Origin: Perna viridis
Lineage: Eukaryota
Assembly (NCBI GenBank): GCA_037379345.1
Contig: CM074515.1
Location: 7,998,001 to 8,062,000, forward strand
Reading direction: 5' to 3'
DNA: 64,000 nt
Below, piece after piece: positions 23,083 to 37,468 of this stretch (its first letter is position 1; every line of letters begins with the position of its first letter). The notes beneath the pieces were generated by a model. That model ran no database searches. It had not been told where the DNA came from and was given only the letters and a program-made list of their open reading frames with translations. A program made the translations under genes and the position numbers.

Positions 23083-24209
23083 ATTAACAATGAATAAATC
23101 TATGGAAAGTCAACACCTGGACACTTTTTTTTCAACAAATGAACATTACAAGTACTTTATGCAAATACTTGTTGAGTAGCATGTTTTCATACTTTTGTCA
23201 TCTCTGACAGCTTTTGTTGATTTTTTTTAGCTCAAATGTTTATGAAGTCCCATAAAATAGTACAAAGCCATAAAATAAAAGAGGCACAATATGAAATTAA
23301 CAATTTTAACTACCACTGGTTACAATTCCAAAATCAAGTATTGTCATTGGTTTTAAAATGATGAATATTAGATATTTAATGAAGTAACTGGATAACAAAG
23401 AACTTGATTCCATCCCTAATCCACAACACTACGGATGCATTTGAGATGAAAGTTGTCTGAAGACATTCTTTTCTGTCCTATTCTATATTATCTTATGTAT
23501 ACAGATCAGCAAAGCAACACAAGCTCTATTAGGATGAGTCGTGACAATATGAGAACAAACTCCTGCAATATTATTACTTCACAACTAACAACGTAAAAAG
23601 TGAGACCAATTAGGGATATGAACATATATGTATGTTTCTTCAGGACCATTTCAGGTTTCACCTGTTTTAAAAGCGTGAGAAGCTAACTCTTAAATGAATA
23701 GAAATTCTTCTAAAAAATCATCATACTGACACTTGAAAAACTTTGGTCAAGGAAAAACACTATATCACGACTTAATGAAGCTTTAGAAATAGTCAAAATA
23801 TGCTGCCTTGTCAAGTTGATGAAACATTTCAAAGATGTCTATGCTATTTGATCGAAACTCCTTGGATTTTTTCTAAAATGCTACTTTGGGTTGAAGAGAT
23901 CATAATAGTCAGATAGATCATAAAACCATGCATTCTATGCTGAACCAAGAACTGTTTGACAATAATTTTACAAATATTTGGAATGTTCTTTGCTAGCTCC
24001 ATCTCGGCAATATAAAGAGAAATTGGTACATAACGCTTCGCTCGCACTTAAGGCCACTACGATTATCATTTGACAATGAAGTGGTCCGCATCATGGCATT
24101 ATATTTTTAAATTAAATAATTTAAAACTTGCTAGAAGGAAACATGAAAACAATTGATCAATTCGTGCAAACACAATGATTCAATTAGGATATTTTCTACA
24201 TCGTGATTT

Positions 24210-24691
24210 AAGCTACCTACACTTAGACGTATGCTCGTTTCTGTAATTTCAATATCAGTGTTGATTTTCAAATCTCCATATTGTGGATAAATGTTGCTAG
24301 GAACAGTAGTCCGTTTCCTAAAGTAAGCGATTATTTCATTCGACAATACTTTTATTTCCTGTTGAAAATCGACGAATGAGATGCATTGTATTGTTTATAA
24401 GTCTGCGGAATAATTCGAAGAAAATTCATTTTTATTGCCAATAACACTAACAAATAGAATCTAGATCATGTAATGCCATTAATAAAGAATTTAATGTAAA
24501 AATTGTTTTCAAAATGATGAGATTATACAATGTAGATTAGAAATTTAGAACTATTTGATATTGCGGATTATTTTCCGTTTTCAACCATTTGTCTTTCGAC
24601 CTTGACATCCCGGCACGTGAAATAGTGTGTGGCCACTATTTTGTCGATTTTGTCATTATTTAACTGAAAGTTTTTTACTTTCCACAAGAAA
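24210..24691. promoter_or_regulatory. Putative bidirectional HYDIN/PRELID3 promoter with RFX X-box-like sites and an E-box
   Basis: Divergent genes; local CpG retention. X-box-like GTTGCTAGGAAC 24293-24304 and GTTTCCTAAAGTAAG 24313-24327; CACGTG 24614-24619. The HYDIN ATG exon has an acceptor at 22808-22810, so an upstream non-coding exon is implied (possible donor near 24216). Confidence 0.55.
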
Positions 24692-27600
24692 ATGAAAATT
24701 TGGACATCAGAACATATTTTTGAGTAAGTCTTTACGTTGATTATTTCGTTCGCCTGTCATTTCAATCATTTTGCAACCTTGGCCCTTGCTTTCTTGCATA
24801 AGCTTTTGACATGATTTAATTTTTTAAAGTGACATTTGATCACCATGTTTGATCGTTGGAAGTGTTAAAATTCGTTTATCAGTAGAATGTTTTTATCATA
24901 ACATTACATTTTCCAACAAATTGTGTCAAAATTTTCCGTCCATTATGATATGAAGTGAACAGGGTATCGGGAAATAGGAATCCTAGAACACTCTTTATGT
25001 TTATATTTTAATTGTATGAAGGTTTGTTGTTTTGGTGTGTACAAATTTGATGAGAGCAGGTTAGATGTACAGTCATTTACACATTAAAGGTTCATCTGCT
25101 CCCTTCTATGGTTGTATTATCAACTGGGTTCAATATATTTATGACCAGAAAAACCACTTATATCCTGTTAGTGCATGTAAAGTCTGGAGCTTTAAAATAG
25201 CATCATGGCAGCTTTATTGTACCCCATGCAACGAAGTTGCGGAGGGTATAATGTTTTCGACCTGTCAGTCCATCTTCAGTTTTCCTGACTTTTTTTTAAA
25301 CCCTTGTAGTTATTGACATGATTTTTGATATATAATTTCACCATGATAAGTTACAAGTCAAGTTGAACTTTCATTCCTCTCTGATGTTTTTTACAGAAGT
25401 TACTGGCCTTGAACTTAGATAAGTTCACAGAAATAACAGTTTTCCTGACTTTTTCTTTAATTCTCGAATACTTGGTAAATATAATTGAGAACTTCACCAG
25501 TCTAGGAAACATTTGTTAGCTTCGATGATTAAATACAAATCAAACTTTAGCTTTTTCCAAGATGGGGATGGTCAAAACATGACTGCCGAATGTTTTCAAA
25601 AATGATGTCATCAGCTTATCAATACCAAACAATTCAACCCAAAAATATTTTGGACCATGACAACCCACAGTTCCTTACCAAAGCTGGACATTTTGGCCCA
25701 AGATATTTTTCAGACCATGTCAATAAGAGAATGCTTAAGGACAATAAAAAACGTATATCCTAACAAATTTTACCATTTTGGAAGTTACCGTATTTTGGTG
25801 TGTATAGTGCACATTTATGTATTATGCGCAGTGCAATTATGAAGGTCTAAATGTGTGAGAAAAAGTTTTTTAGACTTAGATTGCAGTAAAATTTTGTAAG
25901 ACAAAAAAAATCGATATTTTGCACTTGATTGGTCAATTTATTTACCTTGATGCGGTATTTCCTATGAAAATGTGAAGGAAAGGAATTTCTATGCAGACTT
26001 AAAACATCATGTAAACATCAGTAGCTACATAAACTGGATAATTTTAATTACGAAGCGTGATAAAATTGACACAGGATGTATGAAATGGCTTATAAAATAA
26101 AATCGAAAGTCGGGAAAATCGGACATTTTCAGTTTTGGTTGTAACTCAATTTTCACAATTTTTCATTAGAAAACATACTTTTAAAGAAAGAAAATTGTAA
26201 GACACAATCAAAATAAGTATCAGAATAATCATTTTCAGCTGTAACAGCAATTGATAAGGAGGGTTTCACAAAAAAGGAACGAGTTACTATTTGGTTTTTA
26301 GTTGTTTCATATTAATTTCTAACCATGCTTTATAAGAAGGAAATATCATACAATCTTAGTTTGAAATATGTTATTAAGTCATTTGAACATTATTTGAAGA
26401 AAATATCACTAAAAATTTAATACTTAAAAATGTATTTGATGATTAGATAAAATTTCTTTCAGAAACTTTTCACTTTTGGTTTGTTTGTTTACATTATGCA
26501 ATGTCTTTTCACATACTAAAATCTTCAATTTCATGGCCAATTCTTATGTATTGATGTATAATATGCACCCCCATATTCTGGAAATAATTCTATGTAAAAA
26601 TGTGTGTATAATACACACCAAAATACAGTAATAATAACAGGGCTGACAAAAATTATGAAAGGTGTTTCTTCAGGAGTGTTTATGGTTTGACCTTCCTTGT
26701 ATTAAAAATGATATTTGCATAGCTACATACAGTAATTGACGATAAACAGGTCCCATGACTCACAACAGAGCAAACATGAGTTACATTTACATATCCCTGG
26801 TAAGTTGTCCCAATGACATTGTCTACATGTTAGAGATGTCCAGGATTAGCCTACCAATCAAGTCAATGAGATACCTGAATACTTCATTATTACATGTTTT
26901 CTATTAAATGTTACTCATGCGTTTGATTTGAGTTAAAGGGTTTTTTTTTCAACTGGGTTCCCTGATATAAAATTCCACTATTGTCTTCTTTTTGACTTGT
27001 CACTGATTTGCTGTCAGTATATAGTTTTAGTTCATAACATGTCTTGGTAATAAGTGTGTGCATCCATAAAAGTTGATATAAACTTAATATAGTTTTAACA
27101 AAAAGTCAAATTGAAACTAAAACACAACTGGAAAACTTCAGAGTTTTATTATATTTTACACATGGTTAGTTGCTATTACTGTTTGAATAGTGATTAGTTG
27201 TAGTTGAAATGATTGGTCATTTGATAACATTTGAATGTATTAGATTGTTTTGTTCCTAATTTTGTGAGGAAGGCATGACACTCTTGAAGTTGGTCAGAAA
27301 TATAGAAGTTTTGGCCTGCTTTAGGCAAAACGTTGAGACAAAAAATACAGAACATTTGCTCATGTTGAATCTGTTCATTTTTACTTCTTTATAAAAGTGT
27401 AATAAACAAGAGAAAATCAACAGTTTAGCAGATAAGTGCATTACATGTACCAATTTTTTTAATTATTAAAGAAATAAACTTTAATGTAGATTTCTACCTG
27501 CGGAATGTTTGGTTTTAATGATTCTGGCCATTTTTTGATTTCAGTGATCAGAACATTTAAAAACAAAGTAATGGTATGATAGTACATGTGAATTCTTACT

Positions 27601-30600
27601 TTACAGACACAATTGGGATACCATTGTGAAGGCAGCATGGAAGAAATATCCAAATCCATTTAGTGCTGCTGTGGTCGGTGTTGATGTGTTAGACCGACAT
27701 GTGGACAAGGGTGTGTTAAAAACTCACAGGCTTATGACAACCAAATGGGGATTGCCCCACTGGGCTACTAAGGTAAAAAAAATATGATTTACAGGGTTCT
27801 CATGAAGGCACGTACATGCGTCCTGTATACATGAAAAACTTAATGGACGTGTCAAGTTAAACATGGTGCGTCTGTGGGATGCATCCTCCAGGGGTTGAAA
27901 ATTCCTAAAGCCCAACGCATAGGACTAAAAAAAATTGCATGTCGGACTTGAAATTTTTCAATGAAATAAGTCTATCTGGCATGGCAAATCAGAAAAAATA
28001 AAAACTCTATTTATTGTAAGATTTTGTTGTCATTATTTGGACCATGTTTCTCGACCTATTCCCTGACCTATAAATAGTTAAAACTTCATTTTTAGAATGG
28101 GTATTCACTAGATCGATCAATTGATTAGTCTCAAGTCTGAATCACACCTGCGCTTGTTCAGACACATTTTTTGATATACTACAAATTTTATTAATCAAGC
28201 GCTGGAATGATAAAGATCAAATTTCGTTGATAAACTTTTGAGGAAAACATTGTTGCTCAATTACAATTTCACGGTTAAAAAAATGCAGAAACGGAAAGCT
28301 GATGACAAAGCATCAGACCGGTAGACAGAATCAATTGACACTGTATCTTCTTCCCTGCAAACATAGAATTATACATAAGAATATCGGATAACAGAATTGT
28401 ATTTATATCGATTGGGATTTGACACAACATTGTTTGGGCTTAGTGCACAAAAGATGAATAAGTCAAGGGCTCGGGTCTACCCAAAAAAATCTTTAACCCC
28501 TGATCCTCACAGTATCAGCTGCATCCTTTTTTGAATTCATAAAAACTATCCCTAAAATCATAGAAAACTTTGTTTGTTCCACATTTTTTGACAACAGGAC
28601 ATGAAATTGAAGTTCATACAATTTTTTTTACAAGAAAATTAAGTTATAAAGTATTTGATATAAGATTGTGACAAATAATTTCAAAAAGAGTAAAATAAAT
28701 TTTAGAAAGAACCAGATATATTTTACTATAAAATTTGTTCAGAACTGAATTTTTATAACTTAAATGTTGTTGTATTTTTGTGACATGCTGACCTCACATG
28801 ATTGATTGCATAAATGAAATGTTCAAAATTGAAAAAAAATGATATAATGTGTTCAAGATACCAGTAGGTTATTTAAAATAAGTGTTGCAATTTTACTTCG
28901 GGTTGGTGATTTTCTTAGGATCTTCATTTAATTTAGGCAGATGGAACATCTGTTGTTTGTTTTAAGTTTAACTTTGAATAATGCACTTGATCTAGTCATG
29001 ACGTGGGGTTAATCTAGGGGGAAAATGTTTATTTGTTTACACTCTAGTTATCAGCAATTAAGATTTAAGACAATCTGTTGATTACACGGCTTGGGATACC
29101 AGCTTAAGGTTATACCGAAGTCATGTTTTTAAATGAAAGTAAAAATTGCAAATTTCACCTCTGGGGAAATCTATAAACATTCTGTTATCAGATTCTGTTA
29201 AAATATTTTAACAGGTATAAGAGATATCAGCTAAAGTCAATGAACAAATTTATTAAAACTAATGTTGTAAGTCCAATTTCGAATTATTTGAGGAAATGAA
29301 AGTTGCAATATTTTTTTGAAATGTATTTTGGGTATTGTCCCTTGGCATTGATGGTTCAGTATCTTCTACACTTTTCACAAATTGAATATGGAGTAATGTC
29401 ATGATGGTCATACAAAGTTAGTATTACCCAAAAAACCTAGTTACTTACCCTCTCAAGTAGTTATGCCATGAAGCCAGTAAACAATAAACAACACATTTAA
29501 AAATGAACATGGAGGAAACTTATAATTTCCAAATACTATTAGTATTGTAAGTAGGTAACTGAATTCTCATTATATATGAATTAACGTCATGAAGCCAACA
29601 AACAAAATAAGTTTGTTTTCTAATAAAAAGAGATGCTTAGTACTCGACAGTTTAATATGGATGACATGCATAAAAGGAGTAAAATATGGTTTTGTATGAT
29701 TGTACATAAGTGTAGGAGACATGGGGAAACAATAAATACATATGTAGTACTGTATGTACTAAAATAATGAATGTATCGTTCGAATTGTTTTTAAACCAGG
29801 AAAAGGGTGGGGCACACCAAGTTCATCTTGGACTCACCATTCCTGAAAGTGATGAATCCCAGGACGCACTATATAAAAACCCTGATTTAGAAGGTTCACT
29901 TAGACCAAAATCCTTATGATATCACTTTGCATCTGTTTCATAGCATGGCCAGTGATCTAAAAAATTTTAAAGTGTCCTACACTCATTTGCTGATTTTGGA
30001 CATGAAAATTTGTATTAAGGTCAGCAGTTTAGTGTTGTTTGTACATCCTGTCTGAATAATCCCCTTATTATTTATTAGAAATAATTGTTTGACAGGTGTT
30101 CAATTCTTTGATGATGCATTGGTCATTCCATGAAAATAAAACAAAAACAGAGAAGGAAAGCTGGAACAATTCAAATGCAATCCAAGAAATTTTTTTTTCT
30201 TTTTTATGAACTGAATTTGAATTTACTTGCTAAATTGACTTTGTTACATGTATTACTGGTATATACAAAATGGTACTTCATTTTAACCTGAAAAGTTAAT
30301 CAAGCCCAATATTTAACACCATGCTCAGCTGCACTTTAATGTTTAGGGTTAATGTGGCTGTTGAGTATTGTGCTTAATTTTCATGGACAAATTCTATGAA
30401 ATTTTATACTGATAAACACTGTGACATTCCAAATTCGATTTGAGAAGCCTTGGAGCACTTGAACACATTTCCATGGCTCTTATTGCTTTCTACATATATT
30501 CCTTTTCTTGTATACACAGATGGTTGGAATGGCTGATGCTTGTTATGTGAGTGAAGTGTCATATGTGGACCTGAAAACAAATGCAATGGTAATCAGGTCA

Positions 30601-33600
30601 AAGAATGTGAGTTGGTCACCGTTGTCGTTTTCAAAGTCATATGTCTATTTCTTATTTCAAATATTTTACATATCAGTTGCTTTTAGCATGTCTTCATGTT
30701 TTATGCATGTTAGTATTTTGTTCACTTTCCTTGATGTATTCCTTCTCTGTATTAGTTGTTAGGAACGGATGAGTTTCAGTATGGAAGTGAACACTCAGAA
30801 GTTGATCCTAGAAAGAAAACTATGACATTAAAATCAGTTAATGTAAGTAGAATGCACTTAACAGATAAAGTTCAGATTGTGTATGTATTGTACTTCTTTT
30901 GTTCCCTGCTGTCAAGGAACATTGGACATATGTGGCATCCATCTGCAACACCTTGTTAGCACTCTCATGTCTACATATCTCAATGGATTTGGAAGAAATT
31001 TATACATATGGTTGCTATCATAAAATTTTTGGAAAAGTTTGAAAATCAATGTTTGTTCAAAAGAGATTTTCAAATTTTTTCTTGTAAACATACACACCTT
31101 TCATTTCCAAACAGATTAGTTATTCGGATAAAATTCATATCAAATGTTTCTATGATTAATGGCTTTGACAAGTGAAAAATCAACTGATGTTTTTAATTGT
31201 ATTAATGCTTTACTAAAACAAGCAGGTGGATGGCAGACACTGTTATTTCTCTGGAGAATGGTTTGATTATTGTACAGTTCATTTTATTGTTTTGTGGAAC
31301 ATGTTTATATGGAACTATGATGCAAAATATGGCACATTTCTCAAGTGTAATTACACAGTTGGAAAATATGCTACAGCCTACATATAGTAGATTATTTAAC
31401 TCTTCTAAATATGTTGAGCTCATTTGATGGTTCAGTGATTTATAAAGATTTTAAAACTACTTATGGAAATTCCCCCTCAAGATTCATGGGAACTGGACTT
31501 AAACTATCATTTTTGTTTCTCGATAAAGTGGTCTCTAAACATGGCAAATTTGTTTCCATATTTGGTAGGAGTTTATTTTAAGGACGTGTAAATGCACACT
31601 ACACAGTCTTTTTGATTTCAACAACTAATTTAAAACTTTTAAACTGTTTTTCACAACAGTGTTTACATCAGTAACCTCCTGTAGAAGTTGAAAGAAAGTG
31701 TTTCTTTCCATCATAAACATCTGTGAGACATTGTTATAGATTTAGAGTGTTTTGATAATGACATCAATATTATCTATTACATGCACTTGTCAAAGTGACC
31801 ACATGCTGCATCATTTTTTCACTACTTTTACTACTTACATGTATCTTGAAAAGATTTTTTTTTACAGTTATCAACATATAGTCATGTTTTCTTACATGCA
31901 TGTTTACAGATTATTGTAGATTGGTTAAAGTTTGATAAATCCTACCATTTCAACAATTTCATCAGTAACAACACCTAGCATGTAGAAATGTAGAAAGAAA
32001 ATCATCATATCTTTTTATATGAATCATGAAAAAAATGCTTTTAGTTATTTTTTTAATTGATAATGTTAGACTGTTGTGTGTCAAAGAAGGATAATTATTG
32101 CTAGAAATAATTTGTAGTACAGTGGCTACATAAATGCCAATAACATCATTGAGAAAACGATAATTAACCTACATACTCAGCTATTTTCTCATATACTAGT
32201 TTTATAAAATCTGATTGGTTTTATTTGTAGTTAACCTGGTGTAGAGCAGTAACCATTGATGAGAAGTTAGTCTATTCACCCCACCCAGAAGACAGATCTA
32301 AGTAAGTTTGAAATTTACATACTTCCTTAACAAAGTTAATCATATATATATATCAGTTCAGTTTTATAGGAAGTTTGATTAGTTTTATCAAGGAAGTTTT
32401 TTTTACATTTTGAAATATTTGAAAACCAAAAAGACAATGTTTGATTTCATTCAGTACTTAAACAAGAAAAATATGCCTATCGAAACAGCTTGTTTTTTTT
32501 TACTGTTATTCAGATGGAAGGATGTGTTGATTTTTGGGGTACATTTATATATTATACCTAGCTACCCAAAGCCTTTAGGGTTGAGTCTGGAAAGGGAAAC
32601 AACATCATTTTTTTTTATAAAAAATGGGAAATAAATGTGGTTGTATAATGATATGGTACTGTCGTCATCTGTAATCACATATAGTTGAACCTCTGTAAAA
32701 CGAAGTCGAAAGGACCATGCAAAAATGCTTGAGTTATCCGAGGTTGGAGTAATCCGAGGTCCGGAAATACTAGTAGTTTGGTCCATGATTGTTTCTGTAT
32801 TTACATCATTTGTCATGCTTGTACATGTACATGCGCTTCAATTTACACGGTACTTTGTAATGTCATGTGTTTCATATCAGAAGATATTTTTTTGTATGTA
32901 TATCATATTTGAAATACTGAATGGCAGCGAGTATTTTAGTGAAATTTCCTTTTTATTTTTTCTATATCAAAAACGCTGTAGTTCATAACATGCTGCTTTG
33001 TTTGATTCACAATCTGGAGTATCGTCAAACCATGTGCTCTACAATATTACGATAAAATTTCAGATTCATTAGTGAAAGGAATGTAGTCGTTGAAATACTC
33101 TTACTATCATCTGTTTGATGTTTCATTAGTCAGATACCATTACAATTCATCTGTATTAAAAAAAAAATTTCAAAATATCAAAATATCCGATATCACTGTT
33201 AGTGTAAATTCTGACGTGTTATTAAAGAATTTGTTTATTGTAACAACACGTGCAATTTTAAACTAATTAAATAAACAAATCAGACCATAAAGAGTGTCAA
33301 CAAATTAGTTTTAATAGTCACGCTAATTGTTGTTAAAACACACTTCGATCATGGTTTGTAATAAAACAATCAGTTTTCTGACTAATTGGTTGATTTCAAG
33401 ACATCAGGGTTAATTAACATCGAAGTCCTGTCAAGGGGACTGATTGATTACCTCGAGTTATCCGAGCTTTCGAGTCATCGGAGGTAAAATTGTATTGGAG
33501 CAAGGGGAGTTTTGCTGGGACTTTGTAATTAGTTCGAGTTATCCAAGATTTCGACTAATCCGAGTTCGACACATTGAGGTTCGACTGTAGTTTTTGTGAT

Positions 33601-35215
33601 AAATGATAAATTTAATTTTAGTGCAAATTCTTTTTTTTTGAATTTTTCAATTTAAATAAAGTGACCAATTAACTTCGAAATGATCTCTTAAAATAAATCC
33701 CTGGTTAATGATACAGTTTATGGATTTTGTATGATACATGTATTTTCTCTTTAACGAATGGTTAATGAAGCAATTGTAACTGGAAAGCATATTATATTAG
33801 AAAAAGGAAAAGACTGTTAATTACTTAAGTCTATCACTGGGTATATCCAAGAACAAGATCTGTAACAGATTCAAATATGATATAGGAATAAGTTGTTCCA
33901 CATCTTTTTGTAGCATAGTTCATTAGATAGTTGTGCCTTTAGTTGATATCAATATATGCTTTTTTCAGAACACTACTTAAGCAAGAGGCTGTGGTAAAAG
34001 TTTATGGTTTCCCACTAGCTAGCTATTTAGAGAATATAATAACACAGAATATCAACAATAATGCACATAAGGTATGGTTGTGTTGTATTGTAAGGAACTT
34101 ATTTTGTGACAACCTTAATCCTTTAGGAACTTTACAGACTTTCTTGTTTTCTATGTCTTATCTTTTTGGTACTGTGATGTGTTCTTGTGTTTATAAGTAC
34201 ATGTATAATTTGTCATTTAGTAAATTTGTTTTAATTGAATTTAGCTATTATCTAAGACATTGTCTACCTGGACACTCTAAGTAGTTAGCTATAATGGAGA
34301 AAAGTCTTAATGTTTTAGGGGGCTAATTTTTTAAAAATTCCTAAACATTCATGTACAAAAATGACAATTTTTTGTATTTTGTGACCGTGTTTTGTGTGAA
34401 ACTTAAAAGAAAAATTTTTGCATTGTAAAGTGATGGTGATGTATCAAAACAATGTAATTAACTTTTACTGAGCAGGTAACTTTACCTAATGATGGTTTTA
34501 AGATAGAGCTAGCAAGGATGTGGAAGTCCGCTTAAATAAAATAATTCATGAAACATTCAGTTACATGTATGTGCCAAAACTTACCATTATTTTAAGCTTA
34601 TATCATGTTGCAAATACCTGTATACCTGTCTTGATTGAAAAAGGAATAACGATTTAAGTACAAGTCCACATAACATTCAGACATTACCAATGGTAAAGTG
34701 ATTCATGGTCAAGAAAAACCCACCAAACCAACCATGCTTTTTCAGTCTACATAAGGTATACTTTCACATAATGATAATCATTTCTGCATTCAGATCTGCA
34801 CTTTTTAGAAAATCATACATTCATCTCCCACTAAAATCAACCAAATGAATCCAAATCAAGAATGATAACTCTTGCAAAGTGCAGATTCCAGGTACAGTTT
34901 ATATAATTTTTATCTCAAAAGAGCAACAACCAAATGAAAACCTAAGACTGGTTATGTGATCAGTAACTGTTTCTGAAGGAGAAATAAAACTGAATTCATT
35001 GGGTTTTTGACATGCATGAGTCACCTTTTGTCTGATTTTAAAAAGACTGCTGCTTAATGTCTGTTTTCTTACAGGGAAGACAAGGTTTGGAATGGGTTGT
35101 CAACAAAATCAAAACAGAGGCAGAAACACTTCAACAAGAAGCAAAGACATTTACTAAAGACACAGTACATAATGTTGAATCTGTGTTTAACACTAACAGA
35201 GATGGCTCTTTATGA
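24692..35215 (+). CDS. PRELID3: PRELI/MSF1-domain protein 3 (slowmo/Ups2-like mitochondrial intermembrane-space lipid transfer protein), complete, 199 aa with one copy of exon 3
   Basis: Exons 24692-24723 (MKIWTSEHIF), 27607-27772 (EHNWDTIVKAAWKKYPNPFSAAVVGVDVLDRHVDKGVLKTHRLMTTKWGLPHWATK), exon 3 = 30520-30606 or 30756-30842, 32231-32301 (LTWCRAVTIDEKLVYSPHPEDRSK), 33969-34071 (TLLKQEAVVKVYGFPLASYLENIITQNINNNAHK), 35075-35215 (GRQGLEWVVNKIKTEAE...GSL*). The motifs MKIWTSEH, KYPNP, VVGVDVLDRH and PHPED..KT.L.QEA are diagnostic of PRELID3/SLMO. Confidence 0.95.
25213..25475 (+). mobile_element. Truncated Helentron-associated (HINE/pearl-like) non-autonomous element
   Basis: tttattgtacccc-ATGCAACgaaGTTGCG-gagggtata hairpin, GTCY-like tract, and core motif cagttttcctgacttttt repeated at 25277 and 25437 (160-bp period). 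Confidence 0.65.
25788..26628. mobile_element. Non-autonomous Tc1/mariner-superfamily (pogo/Tc2-like) MITE, 841 bp
   Basis: TA|CCGTATTTTGGTGTGTAT ... ATACACACCAAAATACAG|TA; 18-bp TIR with one CpG-decay mismatch; TA target duplication; no long ORF. Confidence 0.85.
27792..29884. mobile_element. ~2.1-kb decayed DNA transposon with CAGGGTT termini and a 5-bp TSD (hAT-like)
   Basis: ATTTA|CAGGGTTCTCAT ... ATATAAAAACCCTG|ATTTA; subterminal TGCGTCCTG/CAGGACGCA motif at both ends in inverted orientation. Confidence 0.65.
30520..30606 (+). CDS. PRELID3: PRELID3 alternative exon 3a (MVGMADACYVSEVSYVDLKTNAMVIRSKN)
   Basis: 87 nt, phase 0/0, acceptor ccttttcttgtatacacag, donor AAT|gtgagt, open frame, aligns without gaps to exon 3b. 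Confidence 0.85.
30756..30842 (+). CDS. PRELID3: PRELID3 alternative exon 3b (LLGTDEFQYGSEHSEVDPRKKTMTLKSVN)
   Basis: 87 nt, phase 0/0, acceptor ttccttctctgtattag, donor AAT|gtaagt; carries the metazoan SLMO-type EHSxVDPxxKTMxLKSxN motif. Confidence 0.9.
32682..33587. mobile_element. Tigger/pogo-type MITE, 906 bp
   Basis: TA|TAGTTGAACCTC ... GAGGTTCGACTG|TA (TIR CAGTCGAACCTC with two C>T changes on the left); subterminal repeats of (TC)GAGTTATCCGAG. Confidence 0.85.
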
Positions 35216-35726
35216 TAAATATATATTTTAGGATTTTATTAATTATGAAAGTATCTGTGATATATCATTCCATCAGCCAATGAGCTTCTCTGCGTTATGG
35301 GCCAGTTACAGCAAATGCAGGTTGGCATAGCATCATTTGGCAAAATGTTTACATTGTTAATTCTGTTCATCAAGTGATCATGACACATAAAACCAATACT
35401 TTTATGTTTGCTTGGTTCTTACCTCAAAGATATGACTTCCTAAAAGATCAAAATATATTTTTATACATATGATTGTTCTGTATTTGTACTATGGAATGTG
35501 GTAACACTACAGATTTTCGCTGAAATTTTTACATCTGTCAGTATTTACTGTCAACCCTTCTCATTAAAAATCTTATCAGTGTGATATCTTCTTGCTCATT
35601 CATCATTTTGAATAAAAGTAGTAATATTCTAGGCCATCATCCTGGTTTTCATTGTAAAATATGTTTTGTGCCATTTAGAAATCCAGCATATTTGGCTATT
35701 ATAAACAATAATACTTCATGTATATC

Positions 35727-36045
35727 TTTTTATACACCCCATTTTATAAGTGGGAGGTGTATAGTGGTCATGGTGTCTGTCCATCCCCTATTCTAATCTG
35801 CAACTCTTCAGATATTGCTGAATGGATTTTAGTGAAACTTACACAGATTCTTTATTACATGATGTCGTTGTGATCTATTATGTTTTCCTATTATTATTAT
35901 CATTATGAACTATTTATATAGCGCTATATATAATTTAGCATTACCCTAAGCACTTCTGAATGCTTATTACTTATAAGGTATCCTACATGGTTATTGGGGA
36001 GGGAAGCTGGGGTATCATCAAGTGAGCTTTGCTCGGTTTTTCAAG
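35727..36045 (+). mobile_element. Degenerate HINE/pearl-like element in the PRELID3 3' region
   Basis: ttttatacacccc...gggaggtgtata, gtctgtcc tract, ggggtatc subterminal motif and GAGC-ttt-GCTC terminal hairpin. Confidence 0.55.
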
Positions 36046-37468
36046 TTTTACCTGCAATATTTAACTTTTTTGTATTATAAATGTGTAGAGACATATCATT
36101 TTCTTAATTTGCTTTAAGTTGTGAATAAGTGGCTAAATGCTTAACCAAAATGCAATTGTTGATATTTTGGTACAGTACTACCTATCAAACAAATTATAGA
36201 AGTGTTTGTTTTTGTAAATGGCAGCATATATTGTCTCATTAGACAGTCATTTGACAAGACAACACAGAGAAAACAAAAAAAATAATATGGAGAACTTCAG
36301 TACACAGAAAAATCAACAGCATACATCCCATTAAAAACCAAGAGTGAATCATGTAATTCAAACCCATTTCTATTCTTTAATTCTTTTGAAATATGTTGTT
36401 TTTTTTTAGTTTTTATATAGAAAGCCTTCGAAAAAAGGTAGTAAACTTACCATTTTAGTTGTATTTGTTTCATGTTTTAATATTTGAGATGATTTTCTTC
36501 CAATAATGAGGGTATATGTGAACTATTTATTCTATTTTCTCATGTCTAGTCCATGTGTGGAGTCAAGTTTTCATGTTTTGGATCTGTATTATATTAGTTT
36601 TATTAATGATCACTGCTGAATTTAGATAATTCCAAATTGAGAAATCATGTTATCATACAGAAGAAGATAATGACTTTCTATTGTCAACTTATATTTTCAA
36701 TTATTAACTTAGTATAATGAAAAGGTAATCATTGTGGCAAAAACATGAGGACGGCATTTGGTATACATTTATTCAATTATTTGGTTGAAAAATCCAATGG
36801 AGAAAATGCAGGTTTTCTTTAATTTAGAATTCAGTTAAGTAATAGCTTTTTCTATTGTAAGCATTTTGTATCTAATTGTTTTATTTTTGTATGTCGAATT
36901 GTAAAATCATGTGTGCCATGTTGTAATATAAGTCTTCAGTTGTCCTTTCTTATGAAACCCTCTTGGGTATTATTTTTGTTAATGTAATTAGGTAAGAACC
37001 AACCCATGATTGCCTAAAACATGTTTCATTGGAGTCTGATCTTTAAACCATAATAGATTAACTACTATCTGGTCAAAATCTTGTAAAAAACCTTATTTTG
37101 ATTTATCTAATGCAATTGGGCCCATTATAAAAATTTGTTCTGAAAATAATTTCAACATTATTGTGTAATGTTCAAACATTTGTCTCATAGGAGAACCTGG
37201 TCTCAGCACAATGAACAATAATTGCAAAGGTTTTATTTTCACCTTTCTTTTTTCCAATTTGGAAAACTTATTGCTCTTTCTTAGTTCCTAAATTACATGT
37301 AGCATCATAAATTTAGGTTGTATATTGAGATCTGATGTCTCCTGCCTCTGTTACATCCACTGAATACAATGTGCCTTGGTATTCTATTCTGTGCTATTAG
37401 ATATACATGTATCAGGTAAATCTTGAGTTGTTAATTGTTAACTTTATTTGTTATAAGAATTCATTTCT

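What the first reader, a model, noticed from the sequence alone, without database searches (positions are those of the whole stretch)
30520..30842. Tandem, apparently mutually exclusive exons swap part of the lipid-binding pocket of PRELID3/SLMO
Seen: two 87-nt phase-0 exons 149 nt apart, each with strong splice sites and no stops. They align without gaps (MVGMADACYVSEVSYVDLKTNAMVIRSKN vs LLGTDEFQYGSEHSEVDPRKKTMTLKSVN; 10/29 identical, keeping G-x5-Y-x-SE-x-S-x-VD-x5-M-x3-S-x-N). Either one alone gives a normal 199-aa PRELI protein; both together would duplicate a beta-hairpin of the START-like fold. Known: PRELID/Ups proteins with TRIAP1/Mdm35 shuttle phospholipids across the mitochondrial intermembrane space (Ups1/PRELID1: phosphatidic acid; Ups2/PRELID3B: phosphatidylserine), and this segment covers the end of the omega-1 lid and pocket-lining strands. 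From recall, 3b resembles vertebrate PRELID3B (EHSxVDP..KTM.LKS.N) and 3a resembles yeast Ups2 (EVSxVDL...RSxN). Inference: positions equivalent to Ups1 T76/I78 differ (C/V vs Q/G), so one gene could make two carriers with different lipid preference or kinetics, a splicing-based alternative to the vertebrate PRELID3A/3B duplication. I do not know of this being described.
Basis: partly seen in the sequence, partly recalled or inferred. Interest (0 to 1): 0.85.

Follow-up and report, generated by a model that had tools for sequence, protein, structure and literature searches.

The report
Ancient duplicated exon in bivalve PRELID3
The only PRELID3/SLMO mitochondrial lipid-carrier gene of this bivalve has two tandem copies of the exon that builds part of the lipid pocket; both copies have been kept under selection since before mussels and freshwater mussels split, but only the second copy has been seen in RNA so far.

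Summary
Two 87-nt, phase-0, stop-free exons lie 149 nt apart: 3a at 30520-30606 and 3b at 30756-30842. Both have AG/GT splice sites and match the same PRELI profile positions (54-82). Their similarity is beyond chance (0 of 200,000 shuffles).

The new result is comparative. The same ordered 3a/3b pair is present in three Mytilus genomes and two unionid genomes. It is absent from an abalone locus and a chiton locus. The 3a exons form one clade (support 94/88), keep the four invariant fold residues of this stretch, and share derived changes (His to V/K/I, Pro to Leu). Between orthologues pN is below pS (bootstrap P 0.003-0.013), as for 3b. So 3a is a selected coding exon that arose in an early bivalve.

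Exon usage is only half shown. An RNA contig in this species joins 2-3b-4. No junction using 3a appeared in four runs, and coverage had holes. In Mytilus the only 3a-containing annotated proteins (230 aa) include both exons. No 3a-only product was found, and no sequence feature that would enforce exclusivity was seen.

Verdict: a real, ancient tandem-exon pair in the segment that carries lipid-specificity determinants. Mutual exclusivity and altered lipid preference are plausible but unproven.

The parts
24692..24723 (+). Exon 1 coding part (MKIWTSEHIF plus 2 nt of a split Glu codon), donor GTAAGT
   Evidence: Pattern scan for ATG..GT in the right phase. The same N-terminus is found in Mytilus and Potamilus.
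27607..27772 (+). Exon 2 (1 nt plus 55 codons), ends in phase 0; PRELI profile positions 1-53, including the first half of the omega loop
   Evidence: 59.3 bits. The exon 2 to 3b junction was seen in an RNA contig of run X1.
30520..30606 (+). Exon 3a: the upstream, divergent copy (MVGMADACYVSEVSYVDLKTNAMVIRSKN). No spliced use seen yet.
   Evidence: Orthologues occur in Mytilus (19/29 aa identical) and in unionids (15/29) with splice sites kept. pN is below pS. The 3a exons form one clade.
30607..30755 (+). 149-nt intron between 3a and 3b. It is too long for steric exclusion, and the AG-free zone covers only about the last 44 nt.
   Evidence: read by eye. The intron is 274-598 nt long in the other bivalves, and between orders it cannot be aligned.
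30756..30842 (+). Exon 3b: the downstream, canonical copy (LLGTDEFQYGSEHSEVDPRKKTMTLKSVN). This is the default exon.
   Evidence: RNA contig joints 27772->30756 and 30842->32231. It is 22/29 aa identical to Mytilus 3b.
32231..32301 (+). Exon 4 (23 codons plus 2 nt), donor gtaagt
   Evidence: RNA contigs in X1, X2 and X4 run from here into exon 5.
33969..34071 (+). Exon 5
   Evidence: Its first 30 nt equal the loose end that follows position 32301 in three runs.
35075..35212 (+). Last coding exon, with the TGA stop
   Evidence: Its C-terminus NRDGSL is the same as in Mytilus.

Best explanation
3a and 3b are tandem duplicates of the exon that encodes the end of the omega-loop lid and the beta4-beta5 hairpin of the single PRELID3/SLMO intermembrane-space lipid carrier.

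The duplication happened once. It came after bivalves split from gastropods and chitons, and before Mytilida and Unionida split. Both copies have been kept as coding sequence since then.

3b is the default exon and keeps the canonical SEHSEVDP..KTM motif. 3a is a minor or condition-specific alternative. It keeps the fold-critical residues (Gly, Tyr, Glu, Ser, Val, final Asn). It also differs from 3b in all three lineages at the same positions (Mytilus numbering): Asp72 to Ala/Ser, His80 to Val/Lys/Ile, Pro85 to Leu, Leu92 to Ile.

The most likely use is substitution: exon 2-3a-4 in place of 2-3b-4. That would give a second carrier of the same size with a different lid end and pocket wall.

Shown: homology, gene structure, age, selection, and use of 3b. 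Inferred: use of 3a, mutual exclusivity, and any change in lipid handling.
For: Anatomy and homology.

The same ordered pair occurs in M. galloprovincialis, M. californianus and GCA_011752425.2, in Potamilus and in Sinanodonta. AG/GT sites and the 87-nt length are kept in all of them. Haliotis and Liolophura have a single copy.

The 3a segments form one branch with support 94/88.

Selection: dN/dS for 3a between the window species and Mytilus is about 0.20. This is like 3b (0.17-0.22) and exon 4 (0.13-0.28). Bootstrap P(pN>=pS) is 0.003-0.013 for the three 3a orthologue pairs. Between the two unionids 3a differs at 3 of 87 nt, while the flanking introns are 66-83% identical.

3a keeps all four invariant columns of this stretch in a 111-sequence family alignment (G70, E79, S81, N96). 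That is what is expected if 3a occupies the same place in the fold.

The exon equals one hairpin plus the lid end.

The omega loop (residues 60-71) and nearby residues (Ups1 T76, T95; Ups2 M93) set PA versus PS specificity in yeast and human family members (PMC6408443).

3b use is shown by RNA contig joints.
Against: No 2-3a or 3a-4 junction was seen in four runs from four studies. In X1 an unspliced contig runs straight through 3a.

Among 464 fetched homologues there is no 3a-only protein. The only 3a-containing products are the 230-aa forms with both exons (XP_076112184.1 'isoform X1' and VDI37742.1).

No sequence feature that would enforce exclusivity was found. Both exons are multiples of 3, so co-inclusion and double skipping stay in frame. 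The intervening intron is 149-598 nt long. There is no long AG-free zone. No intronic block is conserved between orders, and only weak inverted repeats are present.

The few recent changes in 3a are all nonsynonymous: 3 of 3 in unionids and 1 of 1 in Mytilus.
Confidence: 0.5

Rival explanations
1. 3a is a cassette exon that is included together with 3b. It gives a 227-aa protein here (230 aa in Mytilus) with 29 extra residues inserted in the omega-loop lid. It is not a substitute for 3b.
For: This is the only 3a-containing isoform that any annotation reports, and two independent M. galloprovincialis annotations report it. Nothing in the sequence blocks 3a-to-3b splicing. Co-inclusion stays in frame. 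In an AlphaFold model of the 230-aa form, the core folds with 3b in the sheet.
Against: A lid insert would have no reason to keep the invariant strand residues G70, Y76, E79, S81, V83 and N96, or the exact 87-nt length, over the time since these orders split. In the AlphaFold model the 3a part is disordered, with pLDDT about 30. However, 3a has no cover in that alignment, so this result is weak. No RNA-assembly contig encodes the 230-aa form, while at least 13 encode the 201-aa form. Ab initio gene predictors tend to include every good-looking coding exon.
Confidence: 0.28
2. 3a is conserved mainly as an RNA element, for example a decoy or regulatory exon, or a splicing-control sequence for 3b. 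It contributes little or no protein.
For: There are no synonymous changes in 3a within Mytilus or between the two unionids, while 3b has 2-4. That points to constraint at the RNA level. In Mytilus the polypyrimidine tract before 3a is weak. No spliced use was seen.
Against: Over long distances the substitutions look like those of a coding sequence. Third codon positions are the least conserved, and pN is well below pS. The residues that are kept are the family's invariant ones. The reading frame is open in all six genomes examined.
Confidence: 0.12
3. 3a is a dead duplicate, an unused pseudo-exon that looks intact by chance.
For: No RNA evidence for its use in this species.
Against: The frame, length and both splice sites are intact in six genomes from two orders, while the flanking introns between orders cannot be aligned. 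pN is below pS. In unionids 3a is 96.6% identical in nucleotides, against about 70-80% for the introns.
Confidence: 0.03

Closest known systems
Tandem duplicated exon substitution events (mutually exclusive homologous exons), as catalogued for human genes (PMC8373072, PMC9741552) and exemplified by OGDH exons 4a/4b (PMC7969005)
   Same: Adjacent homologous exons of equal length and phase that encode the same structural unit. The pair is ancient and both copies are under purifying selection. Synonymous change in the alternative copy is reduced.
   Different: Exclusive use is not shown here. No enforcing feature was found: there is no short intron, no sign of a distant branch point, no frame incompatibility and no conserved pairing. 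'PRELI' does not occur in the main text of PMC9741552, and no paper links PRELID3 or slowmo with such an event.
Vertebrate PRELID3A (SLMO1) / PRELID3B (SLMO2) paralogue pair; structures 4XZV, 8AG0, 6I4Y
   Same: Same subfamily. The Mytilus orthologue hits PRELID3B at E 2.4e-65 and PRELID3A at about 1e-56, against PRELID1 at 1e-20. In both cases there are two versions of the carrier that differ partly in the omega loop and the beta4-beta5 stretch.
   Different: Vertebrates have two whole genes. Bivalves have one gene with two versions of a single 29-residue segment. 3a is not like either vertebrate paralogue: it is a derived, bivalve-specific type.
Yeast Ups1/Ups2 omega-loop swap experiments (Miliara et al. 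2019, PMC6408443)
   Same: They show that exchanging a short stretch at the lid (residues 60-71) changes PS versus PA transfer. They also show that residues just after it (Ups1 T76, T95; Ups2 M93) tune specificity. Exon 3 starts inside that loop and includes those positions.
   Different: Those are engineered swaps between paralogues. Here the swap would be natural and made by splicing, and only the last 4-5 loop residues plus the hairpin are exchanged. My mapping to Ups1 numbering is approximate. It rests on the matched ranges, because no residue-level Ups1 alignment was shown.

Membership tests
PRELI/Ups lipid-transfer family, PRELID3/SLMO (Ups2-like) subfamily | PRELI domain (PF04707) covering the protein, with exons collinear along the profile | tested here: met
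   Exon 2 scores 59.3 bits (cut-off 27). Exons 3a/3b, 4 and 5 follow at profile positions 54-82, 83-104 and 107-139.
PRELI/Ups lipid-transfer family, PRELID3/SLMO (Ups2-like) subfamily | Closer to PRELID3A/B than to PRELID1/Ups1 | tested here: met
   The Mytilus orthologue P0400 scores 223 bits against PRELID3B (6I4Y) and 77 bits against PRELID1. The nearest annotated proteins are named 'PRELI domain containing protein 3B-like' or 'slowmo'. The test used the orthologue because the window's joined model was not searched.
PRELI/Ups lipid-transfer family, PRELID3/SLMO (Ups2-like) subfamily | Binds TRIAP1/Mdm35 and transfers phosphatidylserine between membranes | not testable with these tools
   Needs biochemistry. 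No complex prediction was run.
Mutually exclusive tandem-duplicated exons | Adjacent exons homologous to each other, with the same length and phase | tested here: met
Mutually exclusive tandem-duplicated exons | Both copies conserved as coding sequence in other species | tested here: met
Mutually exclusive tandem-duplicated exons | Each exon is spliced into mature mRNA | tested here: inconclusive
   3b: yes, from the X1 joints. 3a: no junction in four runs. However, exons 2 and 3b were also uncovered in three of those runs despite exon 4 depth of 47-63 in X2 and X4, so absence is not shown.
Mutually exclusive tandem-duplicated exons | Transcripts carry exactly one of the two exons, never both or neither | tested here: inconclusive
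   The 3b-only form is common: 201-aa proteins and at least 13 RNA contigs. A both-exon form is annotated in M. galloprovincialis. No 3a-only form was found, but the top-120 cut-off of the hit lists could hide one. A Nucella model lacks the exon altogether.
Mutually exclusive tandem-duplicated exons | A mechanism that enforces exclusivity (steric, frame/NMD, spliceosome type, or competing RNA pairing) | tested here: not met
   The intron is 149-598 nt long. Both exons are 3n in length. All sites are GT-AG. No intronic block or pairing is conserved across orders. RNA pairing was examined only lightly.

The most novel reading that the evidence does not exclude
Bivalves have kept, since early in their history, a splicing switch in their only PRELID3/SLMO gene. 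The switch exchanges the lid end and the beta4-beta5 pocket wall. One gene would then make two intermembrane-space lipid carriers with different lipid selectivity or membrane-docking behaviour. This would be a splicing route to what vertebrates achieved by duplicating the gene into PRELID3A and PRELID3B.
Probability: 0.3. Interest if true: 0.75.

Novelty: new member of a known kind. Interest (0 to 1): 0.6.

Why it matters
PRELI/Ups carriers control the supply of phosphatidylserine and phosphatidic acid for mitochondrial PE and cardiolipin synthesis. The stretch exchanged here overlaps the region that experiments identify as setting lipid specificity: the omega loop and the residues just after it.

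A naturally occurring pair of variants in one gene, preserved by selection, would give a ready-made comparison for what that segment does. It would also add a mitochondrial lipid-transfer protein to the short list of ancient tandem-exon substitution events.

For genome annotation, the result flags two problems. The 230-aa 'both exons' models in Mytilus may be wrong or may describe a minor form. And 3a is unannotated in the unionid gene models.

Tried and rejected
1. RNA evidence. The single read-laying run (X1, X2, X4, X8 on 26700-32600) gave only the 2-3b and 3b-4 joints. Three runs had no contig on exons 2 or 3 at all, so this says little about 3a.

2. The loose end at 30207, present in all four runs, looked like a hidden splice site. 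It is a spurious match of a T-rich run of about 20 nt to a transcript from C5:49650109. The loose end at 28968 and the high depth at 28022-28472 lie in interspersed repeats.

3. The first homologue search, with an amphioxus query, returned almost only vertebrates. The representative search with exon 2 gave mostly genomic fragments.

4. The Mya arenaria and Nucella loci could not be fetched because their products are not on record. The duplication is therefore not dated within Imparidentia, oysters or scallops.

5. 3a against solved structures gave no hit at E<=10. BLASTP of 3a against 3b gave no alignment, so shuffle and profile tests were used instead.

6. Docking/selector-type RNA pairing. 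Only weak inverted repeats (71-77% complementary) occur in this AT-rich kilobase, and none is alignable to Mytilus or Potamilus. A 17-nt inverted repeat inside the Mytilus 3a-3b intron is specific to Mytilus. This was not pursued further.

7. Distant-branch-point enforcement as in OGDH was rejected by eye: AG dinucleotides occur up to about 44 nt before 3b.

8. Rfam found nothing in 24000-36500.

9. AlphaFold of the both-exon protein leaves 3a disordered, but this is driven by the alignment, in which 3a has no cover.

Exons were searched one by one by reference, and natural Mytilus proteins served as stand-ins.
Full report
WHAT IS IN THE WINDOW

The + strand carries a complete six-exon PRELI-domain gene.
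- Exon 1: 24692-24723 (MKIWTSEHIF.., donor GTAAGT).
- Exon 2: 27607-27772.
- Two candidate third exons: 30520-30606 (3a) and 30756-30842 (3b).
- Exon 4: 32231-32301.
- Exon 5: 33969-34071, and the last coding exon: 35075-35212.

Both 3a and 3b are 87 nt, start and end in phase 0, have no stops, and carry AG acceptors and GTRAGT donors. They are 149 nt apart.

Each exon alone matches Pfam PRELI at the same profile positions, 54-82. 3a scores 20.7 bits (E 3.9e-4) and 3b scores 18.8 bits (E 1.5e-3) (whole-genome scan). Their gapless BLOSUM62 score is 40, and none of 200,000 shuffles reach it. In the 4.5 kb between exons 2 and 4 only three AG..87 nt..GT windows are stop-free, and 3a and 3b are the only two that resemble each other.

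The pair is single-copy in the genome. The genome has two other PRELI genes, on C3 and C4. By eye, against remembered human sequences, they look PRELID1-like and PRELID2-like, so this is the only SLMO/PRELID3 gene.

WHERE THE SEGMENT SITS IN THE PROTEIN

Natural Mytilus proteins served as stand-ins. The Mytilus 3b-only orthologue (P0400, 201 aa) matches solved human PRELID3B (6I4Y, E 2.4e-65) and PRELID3A (4XZV) far better than PRELID1 or yeast Ups1.

Its AlphaFold model has mean pLDDT 88. In that model, exon 3 (residues 68-96) covers the last residues of the short helix in the omega-loop region (63-69), a loop, strand 74-84, a turn and strand 89-96. That is the lid end plus one beta-hairpin.

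Miliara et al. 2019 (PMC6408443) showed three relevant things:
- The omega loop (residues 60-71) can convert Ups2 from PS to PA transfer.
- Loop hydrophobicity and charge matter for specificity.
- Ups1 T76 and T95 and Ups2 M93, which by the matched ranges fall inside exon 3, tune specificity.

My mapping to Ups1 numbering is approximate, because no residue-level Ups1 alignment was shown.

RNA EVIDENCE

Twenty public runs of the same organism hold part of the locus. I laid four runs from four studies on 26700-32600. In X1 one contig joins 27772 to 30756 and 30842 to 32231, both GT..AG, and runs on into exon 5. That is the 2-3b-4-5 path.

No joint uses 3a in any run. In X1 an unspliced contig (30063-30727) runs straight through 3a at a depth like that of other intronic contigs. 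In X2, X4 and X8 nothing at all was laid on exons 2, 3a or 3b, although the exon 4-5 contigs of X2 and X4 have depth 47-63. Contigs also drop rare variants. So absence of 3a use is not shown.

A loose end at 30207 in all four runs turned out to be a spurious T-rich match to another locus.

COMPARATIVE EVIDENCE (THE MAIN NEW RESULT)

Searches seeded with exon 2 and then with mollusc proteins showed that annotated SLMO proteins of gastropods, chitons, cephalopods, annelids and arthropods carry one canonical segment, roughly xxGxDxxCYASEHSEVDPxxKxMTLxxRN. 3b keeps the second half of that motif. 3a keeps the first half (CYVSE).

Two Mytilus galloprovincialis entries of 230 aa (VDI37742.1; XP_076112184.1 'isoform X1') contain a 3a-type and a 3b-type segment in tandem. 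The 201-aa entries of four Mytilus species, and RNA-assembly contigs, contain 3b only.

Genomic loci fetched for M. galloprovincialis, M. californianus and assembly GCA_011752425.2 show both exons in the same order. They are 87 nt each, have AG/GT sites, and are separated by 274-511 nt. The freshwater mussels Potamilus streckersoni and Sinanodonta woodiana (Unionida) also have an unannotated 3a-type exon 598 and 408 nt upstream of their canonical exon, with intact splice sites. The abalone Haliotis cracherodii and the chiton Liolophura sinensis have only one copy between exons 2 and 4.

A tree of the 29-residue segments puts all 3a copies on one long branch with support 94/88. Few columns are available, so this is suggestive rather than proven. 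The shared derived states of 3a, against a 111-sequence family alignment (Mytilus numbering), are:
- loss of Asp72;
- His80 to Val/Lys/Ile;
- near-invariant Pro85 to Leu;
- Leu92 to Ile.

At the same time all four invariant columns of the stretch (G70, E79, S81, N96), plus Y76 and V83, are kept. The simplest history is one duplication in an early bivalve, after the split from gastropods and chitons and before Mytilida and Unionida separated. From general knowledge of bivalve history that split is several hundred million years old.

SELECTION

- Between the window species and Mytilus, 3a is 19/29 identical in protein and has dN/dS of about 0.20.
- That is the same range as 3b (0.17-0.22) and exon 4 (0.13-0.28).
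- For the three 3a orthologue pairs pN/pS is 0.32-0.49, with bootstrap P(pN>=pS) of 0.003-0.013. Third codon positions are the least conserved.
- Between orders the introns around the exons cannot be aligned.
- Between the two unionids 3a differs at 3 of 87 nt, while the flanking introns are 66-83% identical.
- Within Mytilus and within unionids 3a has no synonymous change at all, whereas 3b has 2-4. That hints at extra RNA-level constraint, as is usual for regulated alternative exons.

A dead pseudo-exon is effectively excluded. A purely non-coding role is unlikely.

IS IT MUTUALLY EXCLUSIVE?

This remains open.

For substitution: 3a has kept the exact length, the phase and the fold-critical residues of the hairpin it would replace. 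That is hard to explain if it only ever formed an extra loop.

Against:
- The only 3a-containing products on record include both exons.
- No 3a-only product was found among 464 fetched homologues. A 3a-only isoform would, however, probably have scored below the top-120 cut-off of the lists. The isoforms X2 of M. edulis and M. trossulus were not retrievable.
- Co-inclusion stays in frame.
- The intervening intron is long enough to be spliced out.
- The AG-free zone before 3b is only about 44 nt.
- I found no conserved intronic pairing.

An AlphaFold model of the 230-aa protein folds the core with 3b and leaves 3a at pLDDT of about 30. Because 3a has no cover in that alignment, this is weak evidence. 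No RNA-assembly contig encodes the 230-aa form, while at least 13 encode the 201-aa form.

COMPARISON WITH WHAT IS KNOWN, AND NOVELTY

The kind of feature, tandem exon duplication with substitution splicing, is well known (PMC8373072, PMC9741552, PMC7969005). Full-text searches found no paper that combines 'mutually exclusive exons' with slowmo, or exon duplication with PRELID3B. The five papers that hold both 'mutually exclusive' and PRELID3 were judged unrelated from their titles and abstracts. 'PRELI' does not occur in the main text of the human catalogue paper PMC9741552. Public annotation has partly seen the exon, as the both-exon Mytilus models, but not as an alternative pair, and it is unannotated in unionids. 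I therefore rate it a new member of a known kind.

The likeness of 3b to vertebrate PRELID3B holds.

THE ORGANISM

Three things point to a mussel-like bivalve. Exon 2 is 80% identical to a contig from a hydrothermal-vent metagenome. It is 79% identical to Mytilus. Matches to an interspersed repeat fall on contigs numbered up to C15.

VERDICT

3a is a selected coding alternative for a specificity-relevant segment. Exclusive use and altered lipid preference still need junction-level RNA data and biochemistry.

Noticed in passing
window 28000-28480: Interspersed repeat inside intron 2. The own-genome search raised 172 candidates and scored 40, at about 89-91% identity, on many chromosomes. It explains the very high RNA contig depth (60-250) at 28022-28472.
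   Followed up: partly
window 30190-30207: All four RNA runs show a contig that leaves the stretch at 30207. The loose sequence maps to G000:C5:49650109. The two loci share only a T-rich run of about 20 nt, so this is a laying artefact, not a splice site or hidden exon.
   Followed up: yes
window 28870-29060: A second, older repeat family (29 copies, 69-88% identical). Its boundary near 28968 gives a loose end in all four runs.
   Followed up: partly
L013:11077-11587, L014:9784-10078, L015:12072-12345: In the Mytilus 3a-3b intron, a 17-nt near-perfect inverted repeat (AAAATTTTGCAGCTTTT / AAAAGCTGCAGGATTTT) brackets most of the intron. It is absent from the window species and from Potamilus. 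It could be the ends of a small transposon, or a Mytilus-specific pairing that brings 3a and 3b together.
   Followed up: no
P0008 (Nucella lapillus KAL8603157.1) and P0278: The dog whelk has two SLMO-like gene models. One (184 aa) lacks the exon-3 segment altogether. This is either a model error or a diverged exon. The locus could not be fetched.
   Followed up: no
L020:25327-25413 and L031:12381-12467: The 3a-type exon is present but unannotated in the deposited gene models of Potamilus streckersoni and Sinanodonta woodiana.
   Followed up: yes
L014:1-1571: In M. californianus the neighbour upstream of the SLMO gene, on the opposite strand, is a very large HYDIN-like gene (5219 aa). Whether the window keeps this synteny was not checked.
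   Followed up: no
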